64,000 nt of DNA, from NCBI GenBank assembly GCA_964057225.1, contig OZ059899.1:21266001-21330000 (forward strand), read 5' to 3'. Under the pieces are notes generated by a model, which searched no databases, had not been told where the DNA came from, and worked only from the letters and a program-made list of their open reading frames with translations. The stretch comes from Auanema rhodensis. Taxonomy: Eukaryota > Animalia > Nematoda. Made by a program: the position numbers and the translations under genes. Positions within the stretch are counted from its first letter, which is position 1. Each line of letters starts with the position of its first letter. Positions 6,001 through 60,700 of this stretch are shown here, piece by piece.

Positions 6001-9000
6001 TAACATTGTCCATCGTCTTTGCCTTGAAAAAAGGAATCTAAAAACATCTACTTTTCGCTAAATTATTTTGAAATTTTTTGAAAAAATTTTTGTCAAAATG
6101 TTTTTGGAAGCAATGTTGAGTGTACATGGAAACTCAACATACACTAATGCATCATTTTTCAAACGATCATAACTAATTTTTGTATTAAGCGTTTCTCAAT
6201 GTAGTATAGTGCATTCGATGCGGATTTTTAAGCTGCGTCGATCTGTGTTATCATATTTGCGCTAGCTTAAAAATGCACCGAGATATCAACTGATATAAGT
6301 TCACACTTATATCCTCGATTTTCACCCTGAAGAATTAATTTTTTCGTTGAATAACATTGTCCATCGTCTTTGCCTTGAAAAAAGGAATCTAAAAACATCT
6401 ACTTTTTGCTAAATTATTTTGAAATGTTTTGAAAAAATTTTTGTCAAAATGTTTTTGGAAGCAATGTTGAGTGTACATGGAAACTCAACATACACTAATG
6501 CATCATTTTTCAAACGATCATAACTAATTTTTGTATTAAGCGTTTCTCAATGTAGTATAGTGCATTCGATGCGGATTTTTAAGCTGCGTCGATCTGTGTT
6601 ATCAGATTTGCGCTAGCTTAAAAATGCACCGAGATATCAACTGATATAAGTTCACACTTATATCCTCGATTTTCACCCTGAAGAATTAATTTTTTCGTTG
6701 AATAACATTGTCCATCGTCTTTGCCTTGAAAAAAGGAATCTAAAAACATCTACTTTTTGCTAAATTATTCTGAAATTTTTTGAAAAAATTTTTGTCAAAA
6801 TGTTTTTGGAAGCAATGTTGAGTGTACATGAAAACTCAACATACACTAATGCATCATTTTTCAAACGATCATAACTAATTTTTGTATTAAGCGTTTCTCA
6901 ATGTAGTATAGTGCATTCGATGCGGATTTTTAAGCTGCGTCGATCTGTGTTATCATATTTGCGCTAGCTTAAAAATGCACCGAGATATCAACTGATATAA
7001 GTTCACACTTATATCCTCAATTTTCACCCTGAAGAATTAATTTTTTCGTTGAATAACATTGTCCATCGTCTTTGCCTTGAAAAAAGGAATCTAAAAACAT
7101 CTACTTTTTGCTAAATTATTTTGAAATTTTTCGAAAAAATTTTTGTCAAAATGTTTTTGGAAGCAATGTTGAGTGTACATGGAAACTCAACATACACTAA
7201 GGCATCATTTTTCAAACGATCATAACTAATTTTTGTATTAAGCGTTTCTCAATGTAGTATAGTACATTCGATGCGGATTTTCAAGCTGCGTCGATCTGTG
7301 TTATCAGATTTGCGCTAGCTTAAAAATGCACCGAGATATCAACTGATATAAGTTCACACTTATATCCTCGATTTTCACCCTGAAGAATTAATTTTTTCGT
7401 TGAATAACATTGTCCATCGTCTTTGCCTTGAAAAAAGGAATCTAAAAACATCTAATTTTTGCTAAATTATTTTGAAATTTTTCGAAAAAATTTTTGTCAA
7501 AATGTTTTTGGAAGCAATGTTGAGTGTACATGGAAAAGCAACATACACTAATGCATCATTTTTCAAACGATCATAACTAATTTTTGTATTAAGCGTTTCT
7601 CAATGTAGTATAGTGCATTCGATGCGGATTTTTAAGCTGCGTCGATCTGTGTTATCAGATTTGCGCTAGCTTAAAAATGCACCGAGATATCAACTGATAT
7701 AAGTTCACACTTATATCCTCGATTTTCACCCTGAAGAATTAATTTTTTCGTTGAATAACATTGTCCATCGTCTTTGCCTTGAAAAAAGGAATCTAAAAAC
7801 ATCTACTTTTTGCTAAATTATTCTGAAATTTTTCGAAAAAATTTTTGTCAAAATGTTTTTGGAAGCAATGTTGAGTGTACATGAAAACTCAACATACACT
7901 AATGCATCATTTTTCAAACGATCATAACTAATTTTTGTATTAAGCGTTTCTCAATGTAGTATAGTGCATTCGATGCGGATTTTTAAGCTGCGTCGATCTG
8001 TGTTATCATATTTGCGCTAGCTTAAAAATGCACCGAGATATCAACTGATATAAGTTCACACTTATATCCTCAATTTTCACCCTGAAGAATTAATTTTTTC
8101 GTTGAATAACATTGTCCATCGTCTTTGCCTTGAAAAAAGGAATCTAAAAACATCTACTTTTTGCTAAATTATTTTGAAATTTTTCGAAAAAATTTTTGTC
8201 AAAATGTTTTTGGAAGCAATGTTGAGTGTACATGGAAACTCAACATACACTAAGGCATCATTTTTCAAACGATCATAACTAATTTTTGTATTAAGCGTTT
8301 CTCAATGTAGTATAGTACATTCGATGCGGATTTTCAAGCTGCGTCGATCTGTGTTATCAGATTTGCGCTAGCTTAAAAATGCACCGAGATATCAACTGAT
8401 ATAAGTTCACACTTATATCCTCGATTTTCACCCTGAAGAATTAATTTTTTCGTTGAATAACATTGTCCATCGTCTTTGCCTTGAAAAAAGGAATCTAAAA
8501 ACATCTACTTTTTGCTAAATTATTTTGAAATTTTTCGAAAAAATTTTTGTCAAAATGTTTTTGGAAGCAATGTTGAGTGTACATGGAAACGCAACATACA
8601 CTAATACATCATTTTTCAAACGATCATAACTAATTTTTGTATTAAGCGTTTCTCAATGTAGTATAGTGCATTCGATGCGGATTTTTAAGCTGCGTCGATC
8701 TGTGTTATCAGATTTGCGCTAGCTTAAAAATGCACCGAGATATCAACTGATATAAGTTCACACTTATATCCTCGATTTTCACCCTGAAGAATTAATTTTT
8801 TCGTTGAATAACATTGTCCATCGTCTTTGCCTTGAAAAAAGGAATCTAAAAACATCTACTTTTCGCTAAATTATTTTGAAATTTTTTGAAAAAATTTTTG
8901 TCAAAATGTTTTTGGAAGCAATGTTGAGTGTACATGGAAACTCAACATACACTAATGCATCATTTTTCAAACGATCATAACTAATTTTTGTATTAAGCGT

Positions 9001-38037: not shown

Positions 38038-38041
38038 AAAT
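38038..38041 (+). other. Left copy of 4-bp target-site duplication AAAT
   Basis: The intact monomer reads GTCAAAATGTTTTTGG. Here it reads GTCA-AAAT-[element]-AAAT-GTTTTTGG. Confidence 0.92.
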
Positions 38042-38328
38042 TGTCAAGAATATGGCTATAGATACTAAAATGAATAGTATAAATGAAGATAAATATATAA
38101 TATAATTTATATAAAATATTAAGATAACAATTATTCATCAAAAAATTAAATAAAATGAATAATTTGAATAAAATGACCCATTGATAAAACAATCCATAGT
38201 AATCGCGCTCCATTTAGAGATTGTTGGTAAACAGTGAACTGTTGATAATCAACTACCGTAATCTGATTAAAACAATATTTAGTTGTTTTTGTCCTAAAAT
38301 TATTGTGATAAGGAATTTTTTTATATTT

Positions 38329-38335
38329 TTTTCAG
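38329..38335 (+). promoter_or_regulatory. Candidate nematode-type splice or trans-splice acceptor TTTTCAG in the LTR
   Basis: Exact match to the nematode 3' splice consensus, lying upstream of the poly(A) signal and the PBS. Confidence 0.4.
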
Positions 38336-38385
38336 TTTGGAATTTTCTCTTGAATTTTTTTGTATTTTTTTTTTTGTTTTTTTTT

Positions 38386-38391
38386 AATAAA
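38386..38391 (+). promoter_or_regulatory. Candidate polyadenylation signal AATAAA in the LTR (functional copy expected at 41652-41657)
   Basis: AATAAA about 30 nt from the LTR end, flanked by T-rich tracts. The LTR is AT-rich and has other AATAAA copies, so position is the main support. Confidence 0.55.
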
Positions 38392-38422
38392 TCTTTCTCT
38401 TTTTATTTTTCGTTCTTTGATT

Positions 38423-38437
38423 TGGGGGCCGAACCGG
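38423..38437 (+). promoter_or_regulatory. Primer-binding site TGGGGGCCGAACCGG, probably complementary to the 3' end of tRNA-Pro
   Basis: Begins with TGG (complement of CCA) immediately after the 5' LTR. It resembles the MLV tRNA-Pro PBS (TGGGGGCTCGTCCGG) and, from memory, the nematode tRNA-Pro 3' end (...CCGGTTCGGCCCCCA). Confidence 0.88.
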
Positions 38438-38851
38438 TCTTCACTATTTTATTGTTTGGGTTGAGCTAATTGCTCATATAACCCTGTTTGAAAGCTCGAA
38501 TAGAGTTTGGTGAAAAAGTCACTGCTACCTGAATAGGGTTCTGTTTGTATTCATTCAATTTTGTTTGGTATTTGCCGAATAAAAGTGAAGTTTACAGAAC
38601 AATTATCATTTGACAGTGTTGGTAACAACAGTGTCTCTTGGTATATTGTTGTACGGTTGTTTTTGGTTAAAGTGTTTTCTTTTAAACACTTTTTCTGTTT
38701 TCTTCCGCTGTGAACTACATTCAGAACTTGGGTAGTAGTAACTAATATCAAGTAAATTCCATTTTCTTGATATAAGTGCTTATTTGATTCTTTCAAATAG
38801 CAATAAATTAGTAGAGGAAACTTCTAGTAATTTTTTTCATTGATAGGTGAA

Positions 38852-41251
38852 ATGTCATTTGTGAATGAATTGCTCGATATGGACTTCGAGAGCGCATTTG
38901 AAGAGGTAATGTTGAATTCATTCATCTCTGAAATATTATCGGCTATTGAGCCGTTGAATGATTGTTTACGTAAAGATTTTACGGAAAAAATCAGAAACTC
39001 TGCTGAGAAAAGGAGAGCAGAGCAGAAAGTTGCTAATTTGATAATTTCAATAAAGCAAAATTTAGCTAGTGAATTGCGAAAAGGGCAAAATTGGAGATTT
39101 ATCCAGTCCATTATTACAGCAATGAACAAGAGTGGGCTCAAAAAGCCTTCAGAGTTGGGTAATACTCTGAAGTTAGCTGATAAACGAGCGGAAACAACTA
39201 AATTCATTTGTGAGATTTTCCAACTCAATGAAAGTGAGATAGTGGACGAGATGAGGGCCATTAATAGTACTATGAAAGATTTATGCGATTTTTTCAAATG
39301 TGATAAAAAATCTTTGAAGCATGAAATATTTAATAGTTTTAATTTGCAGAGATCAGCAGCTATCGAGAGCCAAGCGCAATTAGCTATGGCGGATATGATG
39401 ATTGATGACAAAGCAGCAGGTAAAATAGAAGAGGAAAATTCTGAAATTGAATATATTTTACAGTTGCATCGACAGAAGGAGTTGAGAACAACTCAGAAAT
39501 GGTTGACGGATGTTCAACAGGAACAGGAGAAAAAAGAGGGATTAGACTCCAAGGGTGAGTCGTCTTTGCCTTTTAATGGACTCAGCGCGCAGAATGAAGC
39601 GTTTTTGGACATAATGCGAGCGCAATTGCTGCCTGATGTTCCAAGTTTTTCGAGTGGGTCGTTCGAGAAATGGAACCATTTTGTAGAAGGGTTTCACCTG
39701 AAATACCCAAAAAGCACGTTGTCGGCAAGCGGCCGCAGAACGCTGTTTGTAGAAAAATTAAGAGGAGAGGCGAGAGATAGGTATGATGAGTTGCCTGAAA
39801 TAATCAGAAACAGTTCGCTCGACAAAATAATAGAGGAACTGAATAAGCAACATGAGTATTCTAAGAGAGCAAGTAGGTTAGATGCCATAGCTGCTCTTAA
39901 ATCTTTGAAGTTTGACAACAATAGCAATCTAATAAGCTTTTGTAAGAAACTAGAAGAAACTTCTAGGAAGGCTTACCCCGGATTGTCTATGTCAAAGTTA
40001 TCGTTCACAAGAGCTCAAGTCTTGTATGAGGTACTCAGAGAATGTACTTGTGCATTACAAGTACTTGAGACAATAGAGACTAGTGAAGAAGGGGAGGTGT
40101 ATGAGAAGGTGAAAGAGGTCGCTTTACGTTGTGAAAGAAATAAGCGCATTCACTACAATCAGCATAGAAAGGACAGAATACCTGAAGTAAACCTGCCCAG
40201 GCTGAGATTTTTGAAGCAGAATAATACTGCTAGTGGTCAACACATGACCAATCGTGGCAGTTACGTAACTGAAAAGGTTCGTAATTTTCCACAGAGAAAA
40301 GAAGTTATTTGTTACATATGTAACAGAAGTGGTCATATAGCAACACATTGTGCTGAAAGAAAACGACCATCAGACAATTCTAACAGAATTGAACAAGAAC
40401 AGAACAATATGGGTTCTGTTATGAATAAGCAAGCTGTTGCATGGAACAAAACTATCAAAACATGCAACAACAGCTATGATGCAAAATTGATTGGTGAGCA
40501 GAGTTTACTACCTATGTTAATCTGCAGCATGAGAAATAAAAAAGTTCTTATTGACACGGGATCGCAAATATCAGTGATGTCGTCACAAGCTCTAGTTAAT
40601 TTGATGAATGAAGGGGTTGACTTAGATAGAAGTGTAACTCAACTTCCTTGGAATGGAGATAAGTTCATAGCGAATGCCTCGGGTACGCGAATGAATTTTG
40701 TTGGAGCAATAAGCTGTGAAGTTTATTGCTCAGAAAGTAAAAAAACTGCACAAGTATGTTTTTTGGTGAGAAAAAGTAGAGATGATTCTATACTTATTGG
40801 TACGAATGCCCTGAAAGATTTGGGCATATCTTTGAAGTTTTATAGAAAAGAGGCCATAGCCTTACAGAGAGTTTATATACCTGCGAATAAAAGTAGAACG
40901 CTACAAATCTCATGTGACGAGCAGAAAGATAGCTTACTGGTATCCCATAGGAGTGATATACCCACGGGAATATGTAAAGTGGACACCAATAGTTCCACTA
41001 CAGTGATTGTGGCTAACATGACATGCCAGCCAACCACGATAAAGAAAGGAGAGATTGTCGGTAAATGGGAGTCCGAGAATTGGACTGAAAAGCTGACTGC
41101 ACTGAATGAGATGCACAAAACTCATAAGCCTCAACAACAGCTTAAAAAAAACAGCACCATAACTAATTTCTTGTTGAAATTTAAATTTTCTCATGTATGT
41201 TGTAAATGTTTATTTTTATTGTTGTGTTTAATGAAACTGTTAAACTATTGA
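38852..41251 (+). CDS. gag: Gag-protease polyprotein (799 aa from the first ATG; the ORF track starts at TTG 38840): helical N-terminus, capsid-like region, CCHC zinc knuckle, retropepsin
   Basis: Capsid-like LPDVPSFSSGSFEKWNHFVEGF...KLRGEARDRYDELP, CYICNRSGHIATHC knuckle (40310-40351), LIDTGSQISV active site (DTG 40553-40561) and ILIGTNAL second protease motif (ILIG 40790-40801). No YxDD, RNase H, HHCC or DDE motifs. The true start could lie in an upstream exon. Confidence 0.93.
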   Translation: MSFVNELLDMDFESAFEEVMLNSFISEILSAIEPLNDCLRKDFTEKIRNSAEKRRAEQKVANLIISIKQNLASELRKGQNWRFIQSIITAMNKSGLKKPSELGNTLKLADKRAETTKFICEIFQLNESEIVDEMRAINSTMKDLCDFFKCDKKSLKHEIFNSFNLQRSAAIESQAQLAMADMMIDDKAAGKIEEENSEIEYILQLHRQKELRTTQKWLTDVQQEQEKKEGLDSKGESSLPFNGLSAQNEAFLDIMRAQLLPDVPSFSSGSFEKWNHFVEGFHLKYPKSTLSASGRRTLFVEKLRGEARDRYDELPEIIRNSSLDKIIEELNKQHEYSKRASRLDAIAALKSLKFDNNSNLISFCKKLEETSRKAYPGLSMSKLSFTRAQVLYEVLRECTCALQVLETIETSEEGEVYEKVKEVALRCERNKRIHYNQHRKDRIPEVNLPRLRFLKQNNTASGQHMTNRGSYVTEKVRNFPQRKEVICYICNRSGHIATHCAERKRPSDNSNRIEQEQNNMGSVMNKQAVAWNKTIKTCNNSYDAKLIGEQSLLPMLICSMRNKKVLIDTGSQISVMSSQALVNLMNEGVDLDRSVTQLPWNGDKFIANASGTRMNFVGAISCEVYCSESKKTAQVCFLVRKSRDDSILIGTNALKDLGISLKFYRKEAIALQRVYIPANKSRTLQISCDEQKDSLLVSHRSDIPTGICKVDTNSSTTVIVANMTCQPTTIKKGEIVGKWESENWTEKLTALNEMHKTHKPQQQLKKNSTITNFLLKFKFSHVCCKCLFLLLCLMKLLNY

Positions 41252-41294
41252 ATAAATAGTAATAAGAAGAATTTTTTCTCGGGACGAGAAATTT

Positions 41295-41307
41295 GAGAGG
41301 CCGGGGA
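41295..41307 (+). promoter_or_regulatory. Polypurine tract GAGAGGCCGGGGA (plus-strand primer)
   Basis: 11 of 13 bases are purines and the tract abuts the 3' LTR. Confidence 0.85.
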
Positions 41308-41688
41308 TGTCAAGAATATGGCTATAGATACTAAAATGAATAGTATAAATGAAGATAAATATATAATATAATTTATATAAAATATTAAGATAACAATTAT
41401 TCATCAAAAAATTAAATAAAATGAATAATTTGAATAAAATGACCCATTGATAAAACAATCCATAGTAATCGCGCTCCATTTAGAGATTGTTGGTAAACAG
41501 TGAACTGTTGATAATCAACTACCGTAATCTGATTAAAACAATATTTAGTTGTTTTTGTCCTAAAATTATTGTGATAAGGAATTTTTTTATATTTTTTTCA
41601 GTTTGGAATTTTCTCTTGAATTTTTTTGTATTTTTTTTTTTGTTTTTTTTTAATAAATCTTTCTCTTTTTATTTTTCGTTCTTTGATT
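41308..41688 (+). repeat. 3' LTR (381 bp)
   Basis: Starts TGTCAAGAA right after the purine tract, ends CTTTGATT and is followed by the AAAT duplication and satellite. Confidence 0.97.
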
Positions 41689-41692
41689 AAAT
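41689..41692 (+). other. Right copy of target-site duplication AAAT
   Basis: Satellite phase after the element is shifted by exactly 3651 = 3647 + 4. Confidence 0.92.
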
Positions 41693-56600: not shown

Positions 56601-57741
56601 TTAAAAATGCACCGAGATTTCAACTGATATAAGTTCACACTTATATCCTCGATTTTCACCCTGAAGAATTAATTTTTTCGTTGAATAACATTGTCCATCG
56701 TCTTTGCCTTGAAAAAAGGAATCTAAAAACATCTACTTTTTGCTAAATTATTTTGAAATTTTTTGAAAAAATTTTTGTCAAAATGTTTTTGGAAGCAATG
56801 TTGAGTGTACATGGAAACTCAACGTACACTAATGCATCATTTTTCAAACGATCATAACTAATTTTTGTATTAAGCGTTTCTCAATGTAGTATAGTGCATT
56901 CGATGCGGATTTTTAAGCTGCGTCGATCTGTGTTATCAGATTTGCGCTAGCTTAAAAATGCACCGAGATATCAACTGATATAAGTTCACACTTATATCCT
57001 CGATTTTCACCCTGAAGAATTAATTTTTTCGTTGAATAACATTGTCCATCGTCTTTGCCTTGAAAAAAGGAATCTAAAAACATCTACTTTTTGCTAAATT
57101 ATTTTGAAATTTTTCGAAAAAATTTTTGTCAAAATGTTTTTGGAAGCAATGTTGAGTGTACATGGAAACTCAACATACACTAAGGCATCATTTTTCAAAC
57201 GATCATAACTAATTTTTGTATTAAGCGTTTTTCAATGTAGTACAGTGCATTCGATGCGGATTTTTAAGCTGCGTCGATCTGTGTTATCATATTTGCGCTA
57301 GCTTAAAAATGCACCGAGATATCAACTGATATAAGTTCACACTTATATCCTCAATTTTCACCCTGAAGAATTAATTTTTTCGTTGAATAACATTGTCCAT
57401 TGTCTTTGCCTTGAAAAAAGGAATCTAAAAACATCTACTTTTTGCTAAATTATTTTGAAATTTTTCGAAAAAATTTTTGTCAAAATGTTTTTGGAAGCAA
57501 TGTTGAGTGTACATGGAAACTCAACATACACTAAGGCATCATTTTTCAAACGATCATAACTAATTTTTGTATTAAGCGTTTCTCAATGTAGTATAGTACA
57601 TTCGATGCGGATTTTCAAGCTGCGTCGATCTGTGTTATCAGATTTGCGCTAGCTTAAAAATGCACCGAGATATCAACTGATATAAGTTCACACTTATATC
57701 CTCGATTTTCACCCTGAAGAATTAATTTTTTCGTTGAATAA
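41689..57741 (+). repeat. 351-bp satellite array, + orientation, right of the retroelement
   Basis: Resumes in register (AAAT GTTTTTGGAAGC) after the 3' LTR. Monomer starts run from 41912 to 57706, with a 1-bp deletion near 53512. It ends 36 bp into a monomer at the inversion junction. Confidence 0.99.
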
Positions 57742-60700
57742 GATAACACAGATCGACGCAGCTTAAAAATCCGCATCGAATGCACTATACTCATTGAGAA
57801 ACGCTTAATACAAAAATTAGTTATGATCGTTTGAAAAATGATGCCTTAGTGTATGTTGAGTTTCCATGTACACTCAACATTGCTTCCAAAAACATTTTGA
57901 CAAAAATTTTTTCAAAAAATTTCAAAATAATTTAGCAAAAAGTAGATGTTTTTAGATTCCTTTTTTCAAGGCAAAGACGATGGACAATGTTATTCAAAGA
58001 AAAAATTAATTCTTCAGGGTGAAAATCGAGGATATAAGTGTGAACTTATATCAGTTGATATCTCGGTGCATTTTTAAGCTAGCGCAAATCTAATAATACA
58101 GATCTACGCAGCTTAAAAATCCGCATCGAATGCACTATACTACATTGAGAAACGCTTAATACAAAAATTAGTTATGATCGTTTGAAAAATGATGCCTTAG
58201 TGTATGTTGAGTTTCCATGTACACTCAACATTGCTTCCAAAAACATTTTGACAAAAATTTTTTTCGAAAAAATTCAAAATAATTTAGCAAAAAGTAGATG
58301 TTTTTAGATTCCTTTTTTCAAGGCAAAGACGATGGACAATGTTATTCAACGAAAAAATTAATTCTTCAGGGTGAAAATCGAGGATATATGTGTGAACTTA
58401 TATCAGTTGATATCTCGGTGCATTTTTAAGCTAGCGCAAATCTGATAACACAGATCGACGCAGCTTAAAAATCCGCATCGAATGCACTATACTCATTGAG
58501 AAACGCTTGATACAAAAATTAGTTATGATCGTTTGAAAAATGATGCATTAGTGTATGTTGAGTTTCCATGTACACTCAACATTGCTTCCAAAAACATTTT
58601 GACAAAAATTTTTTCAAAAAATTTCAAAATAATTTAGCAAAAAGTAGATGTTTTTAGATTCCTTTTTTCAAGGCAAAGACGATGGACAATGTTATTCAAC
58701 GAAAAAATTAATTCTTCAGGGTGAAAATCGAGGATATAAGTGTGAACTTATATCAGTTGATATCTCGGTGCATTTTTAAGCTAGCGCAAATCTAATAATA
58801 CAGATCGACGCAGCTTAAAAATCCGCATCGAATGCACTATACTACATTGAGAAACGCTTAATACAAAAATTAGTTATGATCGTTTGAAAAATGATGCCTT
58901 AGTGTATGTTGAGTTTCCATGTACACTCAACATTGCTTCCAAAAACATTTTGACAAAAATTTTTTCAAAAAATTTCAAAATAATTTAGCAAAAAGTAGAT
59001 GTTTTTAGATACCTTTTTTCAAGGCAAAGACGATGGACAATGTTATTCAAAGAAAAAATTAATTCTTCAGGGTGAAAATCGAGGATATAAGTGTGAACTT
59101 ATATCAGTTGATATCTCGGTGCATTTTTAAGCTAGCGCAAATCTGATAACACAGATCGACGCAGCTTAAAAATCCGCATCGAATGCACTATACTCATTGA
59201 GAAACGCTTGATACAAAAATTAGTTATGATCGTTTGAAAAATGATGCATTAGTGTATGTTGAGTTTCCATGTACACTCAACATTGCTTCCAAAAACATTT
59301 TGACAAAAATTTTTTCAAAAAATTTCAAAATAATTTAGCAAAAAGTAGATGTTTTTAGATTCCTTTTTTCAAGGCAAAGACGATGGACAATGTTATTCAA
59401 CGAAAAAATTAATTCTTCAGGGTGAAAATCGAGGATATAAGTGTGAACTTATATCAGTTGATATCTCGGTGCATTTTTAAGCTAGCGCAAATCTAATAAT
59501 ACAGATCTACGCAGCTTAAAAATCCGCATCGAATGCACTATACTACATTGAGAAACGCTTAATACAAAAATTAGTTATGATCGTTTGAAAAATGATGCAT
59601 TAGTGTATGTTGAGTTTCCATGTACACTCAACATTGCTTCCAAAAACATTTTGACAAAAATTTTTTCAAAAAATTTCAAAATAATTTAGCAAAAAGTAGA
59701 TGTTTTTAGATTCCTTTTTTCAAGGCAAAGACGATGGACAATGTTATTCAACGAAAAAATTAATTCTTCAGGGTGAAAATCGAGGATATAAGTGTGAACT
59801 TATATCAGTTGATATCTCGGTGCATTTTTAAGCTAGCGCAAATCTAATAATACAGATCTACGCAGCTTAAAAATCCGCATCGAATGCACTATACTACATT
59901 GAGAAACGCTTAATACAAAAATTAGTTATGATCGTTTGAAAAATGATGCCTTAGTGTATGTTGAGTTTCCATGTACACTCAACATTGCTTCCAAAAACAT
60001 TTTGACAAAAATTTTTTTCGAAAAAATTCAAAATAATTTAGCAAAAAGTAGATGTTTTTAGATTCCTTTTTTCAAGGCAAAGACGATGGACAATGTTATT
60101 CAACGAAAAAATTAATTCTTCAGGGTGAAAATCGAGGATATAAGTGTGAACTTATATCAGTTGATATCTCGGTGCATTTTTAAGCTAGCGCAAATCTGAT
60201 AACACAGATCGACGCAGCTTAAAAATCCGCATCGAATGCACTATACTCATTGAGAAACGCTTGATACAAAAATTAGTTATGATCGTTTGAAAAATGATGC
60301 CTTAGTGTATGTTGAGTTTCCATGTACACTCAACATTGCTTCCAAAAACATTTTGACAAAAATTTTTTCGAAAAATTTCAAAATAATTTAGCAAAAAGTA
60401 GATGTTTTTAGATTTCTTTTTTCAAGGCAAAGACGATGGACAATGTTATTCAACGAAAAAATTAATTCTTCAGGGTGAAAATCGAGGATATAAGTGTGAA
60501 CTTATATCAGTTGATATCTCGGTGCATTTTTAAGCTAGCGCAAATCTAATAATACAGATCTACGCAGCTTAAAAATCCGCATCGAATGCACTATACTACA
60601 TTGAGAAACGCTTAATACAAAAATTAGTTATGATCGTTTGAAAAATGATGCCTTAGTGTATGTTGAGTTTCCATGTACACTCAACATTGCTTCCAAAAAC

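What the first reader, a model, noticed from the sequence alone, without database searches (positions are those of the whole stretch)
38042..41688. Freshly inserted Gag-protease-only LTR element with no RT, RNase H or integrase: a candidate animal counterpart of plant TR-GAG elements
Seen: all cis signals are intact (apparently identical LTRs, PBS, PPT, clean TSD), and an uninterrupted ORF of about 800 codons ends only 56 bp before the 3' LTR, so pol beyond the protease is absent. Established: LTRs are identical at integration, and small gag-only non-autonomous LTR elements (TR-GAG) are described mainly in plants. Inference: the element builds and matures its own capsid but borrows RT and IN from an autonomous helper, like a defective or satellite retroelement. 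The alternative is a one-off deletion in this copy.
Basis: partly seen in the sequence, partly recalled or inferred. Interest (0 to 1): 0.85.

Follow-up and report, generated by a model that had tools for sequence, protein, structure and literature searches.

The report
Pol-deleted nematode-type gypsy retrotransposon copy
A very young 3.6-kb LTR retrotransposon copy sits in a satellite array and keeps its capsid and protease genes but has lost reverse transcriptase and integrase; this is an ordinary kind of defective element unless more copies with the same deletion turn up.

Summary
Window 38042-41688 is a 3647-bp LTR element with two identical 381-bp LTRs, a 4-bp target-site duplication (AAAT) in a 351-bp satellite monomer, a tRNA primer-binding site, a polypurine tract and one 799-codon ORF.

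No RT, RNase H or integrase remnant exists in any frame.

All named relatives (23-33% identity) come from strongylid nematodes. In the relatives examined, the same Gag-PR-barrel module runs on, usually in one ORF, into RT-RH-IN of Ty3/gypsy type. Eight of nine related loci are full-size or carry pol.

Homology ends at about codon 758-761, in the PR-RT linker. The last 38 codons are AT-rich with no homologue, as expected of a deletion scar.

So this is a fresh, non-autonomous deletion derivative of a single-ORF nematode gypsy element that depends on a helper. I could not test whether it is a one-off or a propagating Gag-PR family, because the source genome is in none of the collections. It is a new member of a known kind, of modest interest.

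The parts
38038..38041 (+). left copy of the 4-bp target-site duplication (AAAT)
   Evidence: The empty site GTCA-AAAT-GTTTTTGG is seen in intact satellite monomers. Monomer spacing of 4002 = 351 + 3647 + 4.
38042..38422 (+). 5' LTR, 381 bp, 20.5% GC, starts TGT and ends GATT; AATAAA at 38386-38391
   Evidence: 100% identical to 41308-41688; sequence read; GC.
38423..38439 (+). primer-binding site TGGGGGCCGAACCGGTC, directly abutting the LTR
   Evidence: The same TGGGGGCC(G/A)A(G/A)CC motif follows the 5' LTR of four strongylid relatives.
38440..38851 (+). untranslated leader; a packaging-signal role is presumed, not shown
   Evidence: No ORF and no Rfam match. The function is an inference from LTR-element biology.
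38852..41251 (+). single ORF of 799 codons plus stop: Gag, protease and a dUTPase-like domain
38852..39586 (+). N-terminal Gag region (aa 1-245) upstream of the capsid-like domain
   Evidence: Collinear with the N-terminus of the Haemonchus placei polyprotein from aa 13. Cer1 GAG has a comparable long helical N-terminal region (PMC10309623); the link to Cer1 is a resemblance only.
39587..40174 (+). capsid-like all-helical domain (aa 246-441)
   Evidence: AF2 model residues 22-217 have pLDDT above 90. Weak Pfam DUF1759 match (E 1e-4, below cut-off) and a Copia VLP capsid match at E 0.009. Foldseek against BFVD gives retroviral Gag and Gag-Pol polyproteins as top hits.
40307..40354 (+). single CCHC zinc knuckle (aa 486-501), the nucleocapsid
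   Evidence: Pfam zf-CCHC match. The motif C-x2-C-x4-H-x4-C is read. HIV nucleocapsid hits appear.
40505..40813 (+). retropepsin-type aspartic protease (aa 552-654); D568-T569-G570 at 40553-40561; LIGTNAL motif present
   Evidence: Pfam gag-asp_proteas match, weak. Foldseek against PDB hits HIV, EIAV, FIV and Ddi1 proteases at E 4e-5. D, G and the G-x-N motif are invariant in a 31-sequence alignment. DNA read.
40847..41071 (+). short dUTPase-like beta-barrel domain (aa 666-740), conserved between PR and RT in all relatives
   Evidence: AF2 model of the domain alone has pLDDT 87. All of the top 50 PDB matches are trimeric dUTPases, at E about 4e-3 and TM about 0.5. Conserved across 33 sequences. 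No Pfam dUTPase hit, so catalytic competence is doubtful.
41125..41150 (+). zone that contains the 5' deletion breakpoint (end of homology, aa 758-761; start of the composition break)
   Evidence: Alignments with full-length relatives. GC drops from 38.5% to 22.8% at 41135.
41135..41248 (+). 38-codon AT-rich tail with no homologue, read through to a chance stop
   Evidence: No match to any part of the relatives' pol.
41295..41307 (+). polypurine tract (GAGAGGCCGGGGA) abutting the 3' LTR
   Evidence: G-rich tracts occupy the same place in relatives.
41308..41688 (+). 3' LTR, 381 bp
41689..41692 (+). right copy of the target-site duplication (AAAT)

Best explanation
This is a very recently integrated, non-autonomous copy of a nematode-type Ty3/gypsy LTR retrotransposon of the single-ORF gag-pol kind, whose best-studied representative is C. 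elegans Cer1.

An internal deletion of roughly 3.5-4.5 kb runs from the PR-RT linker to within about 170 nt of the 3' LTR. It removed all of RT, RNase H and integrase. It left the LTRs, PBS, PPT and leader, and an intact ORF with five parts: N-terminal Gag region, capsid, nucleocapsid knuckle, protease and dUTPase-like barrel.

The transcript would run from the 5' LTR to the AATAAA in the 3' LTR. It can be translated into a self-cleaving Gag-PR polyprotein. It can be copied and inserted only if RT/RH and IN come from an autonomous relative in the same cell.

The deletion most probably arose by template switching during reverse transcription, either in the cycle that produced this copy or in an ancestor.

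Shown: the anatomy, the absence of pol, homology to full-length elements, and the position of the breakpoint zone. Inferred: the mechanism of the deletion, the dependence on a helper, and expression.
For: Integration hallmarks: identical LTRs, a clean 4-bp TSD, PBS and PPT. Relatives also show 4-bp TSDs, TGT LTR starts, the same PBS motif and G-rich PPTs.

Homologues: an exhaustive HMMER search gives 367 homologues, the best at 33% identity. All 20 query proteins whose source names an organism come from Strongylida.

Full-length relatives carry the same Gag-PR-barrel module followed by RVT_1, RT_RNaseH, Integrase_H2C2 and rve:
- P0066, 2191 aa, one ORF.
- H. placei contig, period 7627 bp, RT starting at aa 920.
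- C. nassatus, 6772-bp element with a 1923-aa ORF.

Eight of nine related loci are full-size or contain pol.

The window ORF aligns with H. placei over aa 13-761 and stops matching in the linker. The tail is compositionally foreign. No pol remnant is present. Folds are confirmed for capsid-like, PR and barrel domains.
Against: - The parent element and the source genome were not available, so the deletion is inferred from relatives at only 23-33% identity, not from a direct parent-derivative alignment.
- The excision is unusually tidy: all of pol is gone and every cis signal and the whole Gag-PR ORF are kept. That could reflect selection in a propagating lineage rather than a random event.
- The LTR 3' end is ...GATT, not ...CA. 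This is unexplained, although a C. nassatus relative ends ...GACT.
Confidence: 0.85

Rival explanations
1. One reading: the copy belongs to an established, multi-copy Gag-PR-only non-autonomous family. Such a family would package its own RNA in its own capsids and parasitise the RT and IN of an autonomous partner, as an animal analogue of plant TR-GAG. This nests inside the best explanation; it concerns whether the deletion is inherited and propagating.
For: The copy is fresh (0 differences in 381 bp of LTR) and every cis signal and the 761 homologous codons are intact. The deletion removes pol almost exactly and nothing else. TR-GAG-type elements are documented to transpose with help in plants (PMC8704663).
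Against: - Only one copy is seen.
- Intactness follows from youth alone.
- The ORF ends in a 38-codon tail with no homologue rather than a tidy terminus.
- No LTR-bounded Gag-PR-only element was found among the nine related loci sampled.
- The finding was selected for looking clean, which is an ascertainment bias.
Confidence: 0.35
2. A full-length element inserted here and lost pol afterwards by a genomic deletion (illegitimate recombination or replication slippage) at this locus.
For: Nothing in the sequence excludes it. The locus is in a satellite array, where rearrangements are common; there is an orientation flip at 57741/57742.
Against: The LTRs are still identical and the Gag-PR ORF has no stop, so little time has passed. 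The 95% upper bound is about 1-4 million generations at 1-3e-9 per site. Satellite spacing around the insert is exact. No direct repeats that could have mediated a deletion are seen inside the element.
Confidence: 0.1
3. The copy is a retro-copy of a spliced subgenomic RNA in which pol was removed as an intron. Drosophila copia makes Gag from a spliced RNA (from my own knowledge), and Cer1 makes cerv mRNA by splicing.
For: Cer1 genomic RNA carries functional splice sites and produces a spliced mRNA that joins gag-region exons to the 3' end (PMC10309623). The junction zone contains exon-end-like CAG triplets. The excision of pol is tidy.
Against: Relatives show no splice-donor-like motif at a conserved position in the PR-RT linker: positions are scattered and one relative has none. 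The Cer1 splice removes most of gag, unlike here. Without the parent sequence no donor or acceptor can be shown.
Confidence: 0.08
4. Assembly artefact: a longer element was collapsed or mis-joined in a repetitive region.
For: The surroundings are 64 kb of near-identical satellite, which is hard to assemble.
Against: Collapse does not remove unique internal sequence such as pol. The two element-satellite junctions restore one intact monomer with a TSD to the base.
Confidence: 0.03

Closest known systems
Single-ORF Ty3/gypsy elements of strongylid nematodes (unnamed; e.g. Haemonchus placei UZAF01000374.1, Cylicocyclus nassatus CATQJL010000001.1 89.06-89.08 Mb, Ancylostoma duodenale KAL6739142.1)
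   Same: - Collinear N-terminal Gag region, capsid, CCHC knuckle, PR and dUTPase-like barrel, at 23-33% identity.
- The same PBS motif TGGGGGCC(G/A)A(G/A)CC, 4-bp TSDs, LTRs starting TGT and a G-rich PPT.
   Different: Those elements continue, generally in the same ORF, into RT, RNase H and integrase, and are 6.8-13 kb long. The window copy stops in the PR-RT linker and is 3.6 kb. The window copy is much more AT-rich, and its LTR ends GATT.
Cer1 of Caenorhabditis elegans (Ty3/gypsy; PMC10309623, PMC3315495)
   Same: Nematode host (inferred for the window). In Cer1 and in the window's relatives, gag and pol are in one ORF without a stop. A long region precedes the capsid-like domain in GAG.
   Different: Direct sequence similarity to Cer1 was not tested here. 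Cer1 is autonomous (2272-aa polyprotein) and has the extra spliced cerv gene, of which nothing is seen in the window element.
TR-GAG elements of plants (terminal-repeat retrotransposons with a GAG domain; described in PMC8704663 and its reference 35)
   Same: Small LTR-bounded element with PBS and PPT and one ORF retaining the structural protein. RT and IN are absent. Presumed to be mobilised by a related autonomous element.
   Different: - TR-GAG encode GAG only; this ORF also has PR and a dUTPase-like domain.
- TR-GAG are multi-copy families found across plant species; here there is one copy of unknown copy number, in a probable nematode.
- All TR-GAG papers retrieved concern plants.
Internally deleted, trans-mobilised LTR elements of animals (mouse IAP I-delta-1 and ETn/MusD, from my own knowledge; 'non-autonomous' LTR copies catalogued in clade V nematodes, bioRxiv 10.1101/2025.09.22.674508; deleted copies in Culex, PMC3286476)
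   Same: A deletion derivative of an autonomous LTR element that keeps its cis signals and part of the coding region. In clade V nematodes, copies lacking one or more domains are treated as a routine annotation class.
   Different: The particular retained set (complete Gag-PR-barrel, no pol at all) combined with evident youth is a neat example. No evidence of amplification exists for it.

Membership tests
LTR retrotransposon (structural definition) | Two direct long terminal repeats flanked by a short target-site duplication | tested here: met
   381-bp LTRs at 100% identity; 4-bp AAAT TSD verified against the empty site in neighbouring monomers.
LTR retrotransposon (structural definition) | tRNA primer-binding site after the 5' LTR and a polypurine tract before the 3' LTR | tested here: met
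   TGG-initiated 17-nt PBS at 38423 and purine-rich tract at 41295-41307. The PBS motif is shared with relatives. The cognate tRNA was not identified: no tRNA gene is in the window or the loci. tRNA-Pro is only a recollection.
LTR retrotransposon (structural definition) | LTR termini 5'-TG...CA-3' | tested here: not met
   The LTR starts TGT but ends GATT. A C. nassatus relative ends GACT, while A. ceylanicum and N. brasiliensis relatives end ACA.
Ty3/gypsy (Metaviridae) | pol domain order PR-RT-RH-IN and RT phylogeny | not testable with these tools
   This copy has no RT or IN. Assignment rests on Gag-PR homology to elements whose pol has RVT_1, RT_RNaseH, Integrase_H2C2 and rve in that order.
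Ty3/gypsy (Metaviridae) | Gag with a capsid-like domain and CCHC knuckle, followed by a retropepsin | tested here: met
Bel-Pao (Belpaoviridae) | Gag of the DUF1759 family, Peptidase_A17 protease and Bel-Pao-type pol | tested here: not met
   DUF1759 scores 22.8 bits against a cut-off of 25.4. There is no Peptidase_A17 or DUF1758 hit. Relatives' pol is gypsy-type with Integrase_H2C2.
TR-GAG | LTR-bounded, with PBS and PPT, and no RT, RH or IN | tested here: met
TR-GAG | Single ORF encoding GAG only | tested here: not met
   The ORF also encodes an apparently intact protease and a dUTPase-like domain.
TR-GAG | A multi-copy family with a conserved structure, distinct from sporadic deletions | not testable with these tools
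   The source genome is absent from all collections. There is no exact protein on record, the best homologue is 33% identical, and the LTR/PBS and satellite k-mers give 0 hits.
TR-GAG | Plant host | tested here: not met
   All named homologues are from nematodes.
Cer1 clade | Sequence relatedness to the C. elegans Cer1 polyprotein | not tested
   No Cer1 sequence was available by reference. Only architectural resemblance, taken from PMC10309623.
trimeric dUTPase | Beta-barrel fold | tested here: inconclusive
   All top 50 PDB matches are dUTPases, but at E about 4e-3 and TM about 0.5. The domain is about 75 aa against about 130 aa for the matched chains.
trimeric dUTPase | Conserved catalytic motifs detectable by sequence | tested here: not met
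   No Pfam dUTPase match at E up to 1. Motif-by-motif inspection was not done rigorously.

The most novel reading that the evidence does not exclude
The copy represents an actively propagating Gag-PR-(dUTPase-like)-only LTR family in a nematode. Such a family would be a capsid-making satellite retroelement that hijacks the RT and IN of an autonomous Cer1-like helper, and would be the first animal counterpart of plant TR-GAG elements. It would also show a niche in satellite heterochromatin.
Probability: 0.3. Interest if true: 0.55.

Novelty: new member of a known kind. Interest (0 to 1): 0.3.

Why it matters
As it stands, this is a clean textbook example of a defective LTR element. It also marks recent retrotransposition into a satellite array of an AT-rich, probably nematode, genome.

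It would matter more if the same 3.6-kb structure recurs with different target-site duplications. It would then be an animal case of a capsid-encoding parasite of an autonomous retrotransposon. That would be useful for asking how Gag chooses RNA in cis or in trans, and how defective elements compete with their helpers.

A secondary point concerns the conserved dUTPase-like barrel between PR and RT in this nematode gypsy lineage. I did not find it described in the papers I read, and it deserves a proper look.

Tried and rejected
Searches for the source genome or other copies:
- Exact-protein look-up: nothing.
- Word-based protein search: nothing at E up to 1e-3, apparently swamped by low-complexity words.
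- LTR/PBS 23-mer in metagenome, prokaryote-genome and viral collections: 0 hits.
- Satellite 21-mer, present in 135 monomers of the window: 0 hits in the metagenome and genome collections.
- Literature search for a 351-bp nematode satellite: nothing relevant.
- The species therefore remains unknown.

Other checks that led nowhere:
- Rfam scan of the element: no match.
- Bel-Pao assignment, suggested by a weak DUF1759 hit: rejected because relatives carry gypsy-type pol.
- Pol remnants in other frames: none.
- Repeats inside the element that might have mediated the deletion: none of note.
- Spliced-RNA origin: no conserved donor in relatives.
- tRNA genes in the fetched loci, to identify the primer: none.
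- Domesticated host gene: rejected for the window copy because of the identical LTRs and TSD.

The alignment tool prints consensus lines automatically. I did not use, save or carry them forward.
Full report
**Setting.** The whole 64-kb window is a tandem array of a 351-bp, 31% GC satellite. It lies in one orientation from 1 to 57741 and inverted from 57742 to the end. The only non-satellite sequence is the flagged block, which stands out by GC skew and composition.

**Observation.** The block is a 3647-bp LTR element at 38042-41688.
- Its two 381-bp LTRs are identical at every position.
- Satellite monomers on either side are 4002 bp apart rather than 351, which is exactly element plus 4 bp.
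- Intact neighbouring monomers show the empty site GTCA-AAAT-GTTTTTGG, and AAAT is duplicated at both ends of the insert.
- A TGG-initiated 17-nt primer-binding site follows the 5' LTR directly, and a purine-rich tract abuts the 3' LTR.
- Each LTR has an AATAAA 31 nt before its end.
- One ORF runs from the ATG at 38852 to a stop at 41249-41251, giving 799 codons. The other forward frames hold 72 and 96 stops. A stop-free run of this length has a chance probability of about 1e-30 at this composition.

**What the ORF encodes.**
- Pfam gives only weak hits: a retrotransposon gag family (DUF1759, below cut-off), one CCHC knuckle and gag-asp_proteas.
- PDB sequence search gives the Copia VLP capsid and retroviral-like aspartic proteases, also weakly.
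- An AlphaFold2 model of residues 225-765, built on 30 homologues, has a mean pLDDT of 82. It shows an all-helical capsid-like domain, a disordered linker around the knuckle, a beta-rich protease and a further beta domain.
- Foldseek matches the model to HIV, EIAV, FIV and Ddi1 proteases in the PDB. In BFVD it matches retroviral Gag and Gag-Pol polyproteins over 500-650 columns.
- D568-T569-G570 and the downstream G-x-N motif are invariant across 31 sequences.
- The extra domain (aa 666-740) was modelled alone at pLDDT 87. It matches only trimeric dUTPases among the top 50 PDB hits, at modest scores (E about 4e-3, TM about 0.5).
- That domain is about half the size of a dUTPase and has no Pfam dUTPase signal, so I call it dUTPase-like and probably non-catalytic (inference).
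- It is conserved in position and sequence in every relative. 'Gag-protease only' should therefore read 'Gag-protease-barrel'.

**Relatives.**
- The exhaustive profile-free HMMER search of 1.84 billion representatives found 367 homologues, the best only 33% identical.
- All 20 query proteins whose source names an organism come from strongylid nematodes: Cooperia, Ostertagia, Haemonchus, Ancylostoma, Nippostrongylus and Cylicocyclus.
- The host of the window is therefore probably a nematode. Neither it nor a close relative is in the protein collection.
- Full-length relatives show what the module belongs to:
  - P0066 is a 2191-aa single ORF with zf-CCHC, RVT_1, RT_RNaseH, Integrase_H2C2 and rve.
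  - The H. placei contig is a circular permutation of a 7.6-kb unit whose gag ORF runs straight into RT at residue 920, then into RH and IN.
  - The C. nassatus element is 6772 bp, with 465-bp LTRs 99.6% identical (two differences next to the LTR end) and a 1923-aa ORF.
- This is the Ty3/gypsy arrangement. The lack of a stop between gag and pol is as described for Cer1 of C. elegans (PMC10309623).
- Of nine related loci examined, eight are full-size or carry pol.
- Cis features agree as well: the PBS motif TGGGGGCC(G/A)A(G/A)CC in four relatives, 4-bp TSDs, LTRs beginning TGT and G-rich PPTs.

**Where pol went.**
- tblastn with the relatives' polyproteins finds Gag-PR in frame 1 and nothing else in the element.
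- The window ORF is collinear with the H. placei polyprotein from residue 13 to 761. It follows all relatives through the barrel domain to the conserved D-M-L motif, which reads E-M-H here at aa 755-757.
- About 45 codons before the point where relatives begin the RT, the similarity stops.
- From nt 41135 the GC content falls from 38.5% to 22.8%.
- The reading frame continues for 38 codons rich in Phe, Leu, Lys and Cys and ends 56 bp before the LTR.
- In the C. nassatus element the pol ORF stops 35 nt before the 3' LTR. The window's tail is therefore most simply the extreme 3' end of the parent's internal region read out of context.
- This is the signature of an internal deletion of roughly 3.5-4.5 kb, not of a native Gag-PR gene.

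**How it most likely works.**
- Shown: all cis signals and an intact Gag-PR-barrel ORF are present.
- Inferred from general LTR-element biology: transcription from the 5' LTR, translation of a Gag-PR polyprotein able to assemble and mature particles, and packaging of its own RNA through the leader.
- Also inferred: complete dependence on RT/RH and IN from an autonomous relative in the same cell.
- The identical LTRs bound the age at roughly 1-4 million generations at 1-3e-9 substitutions per site, as a 95% limit.
- The deletion may have arisen in the very reverse-transcription cycle that made this copy, in an ancestor (which would make it a family), or after integration.
- The data at hand cannot separate these three routes. 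I rate a propagating family at about one in three.
  - For a family: the tidy excision and the full preservation of function.
  - Against it: the single copy, the scar-like tail, the ascertainment bias, and the absence of LTR-bounded Gag-PR-only relatives among the nine loci sampled.
- A spliced-RNA origin was considered but has no support from relatives.

**Comparison with known systems.**
- TR-GAG, as used in the plant literature, means two LTRs and a single ORF for GAG only, with a related autonomous partner (PMC8704663). Every TR-GAG paper retrieved concerns plants.
- The window element works like a TR-GAG in being helper-dependent while making its own structural protein.
- It fails the 'GAG only' criterion, and the 'family' criterion is untestable here.
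- Internally deleted LTR copies are routine in animals. In clade V nematodes they are an annotation class (bioRxiv 10.1101/2025.09.22.674508). They were noted in Culex (PMC3286476). From my own knowledge, mouse IAP I-delta-1 and ETn are deletion derivatives that out-transpose their parents.
- The finding is therefore a new member of a known kind.

**Limits.**
- The source species is unidentified and its genome unreachable with these tools.
- The parent element was never seen.
- The identity of the primer tRNA is only a recollection (possibly tRNA-Pro) and was not tested.
A mobilisation experiment is referred.

Noticed in passing
window 57643-57742: The 351-bp satellite array switches orientation at 57741/57742. 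The two arms face each other across about 99 bp of unpaired monomer sequence, so the window holds a very large inverted repeat of satellite DNA.
   Followed up: partly
window 40847-41071 (ORF aa 666-740), and the same position in L001-L009: A compact beta-barrel domain lies between protease and RT and is conserved in this whole nematode gypsy lineage. Its predicted fold matches only trimeric dUTPases, at modest scores. It has no Pfam dUTPase signal and is about half the size, so it may be a degenerate dUTPase.
   Followed up: partly
L007:10001-12616 (Nippostrongylus brasiliensis UYSL01019848.1, protein P0013 / VDL70575.1): An intact 871-codon single-exon Gag-PR-barrel ORF with a D-T-G protease and an Arg/Ser-rich C-terminal tail. 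It sits between host genes, with no pol and no LTR pair anywhere in 22.6 kb. It may be a domesticated or stranded gag-pro gene.
   Followed up: partly
window 38419-38422 and 41685-41688; L003 LTR ends: The LTRs end in ...GATT rather than the near-universal ...CA. The C. nassatus relative ends ...GACT, while the A. ceylanicum and N. brasiliensis relatives end ...ACA. Integration with a normal 4-bp TSD evidently still occurred.
   Followed up: no
L002 (Haemonchus placei UZAF01000374.1), 1-667 versus 7628-8294: The 8.3-kb contig is a circular permutation of one element (period 7627 bp, ends 100% identical over the 300 nt compared). This suggests a tandem or collapsed assembly, or a circular form. 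The annotated 'partial' 826-aa protein is only the start of a polyprotein of about 2200 aa.
   Followed up: partly
window 1-57741: A 21-mer of the satellite is exact in 135 of about 172 monomers, and the missing ones fall irregularly. This hints at variant monomers interspersed in the array; no higher-order period was looked for.
   Followed up: no
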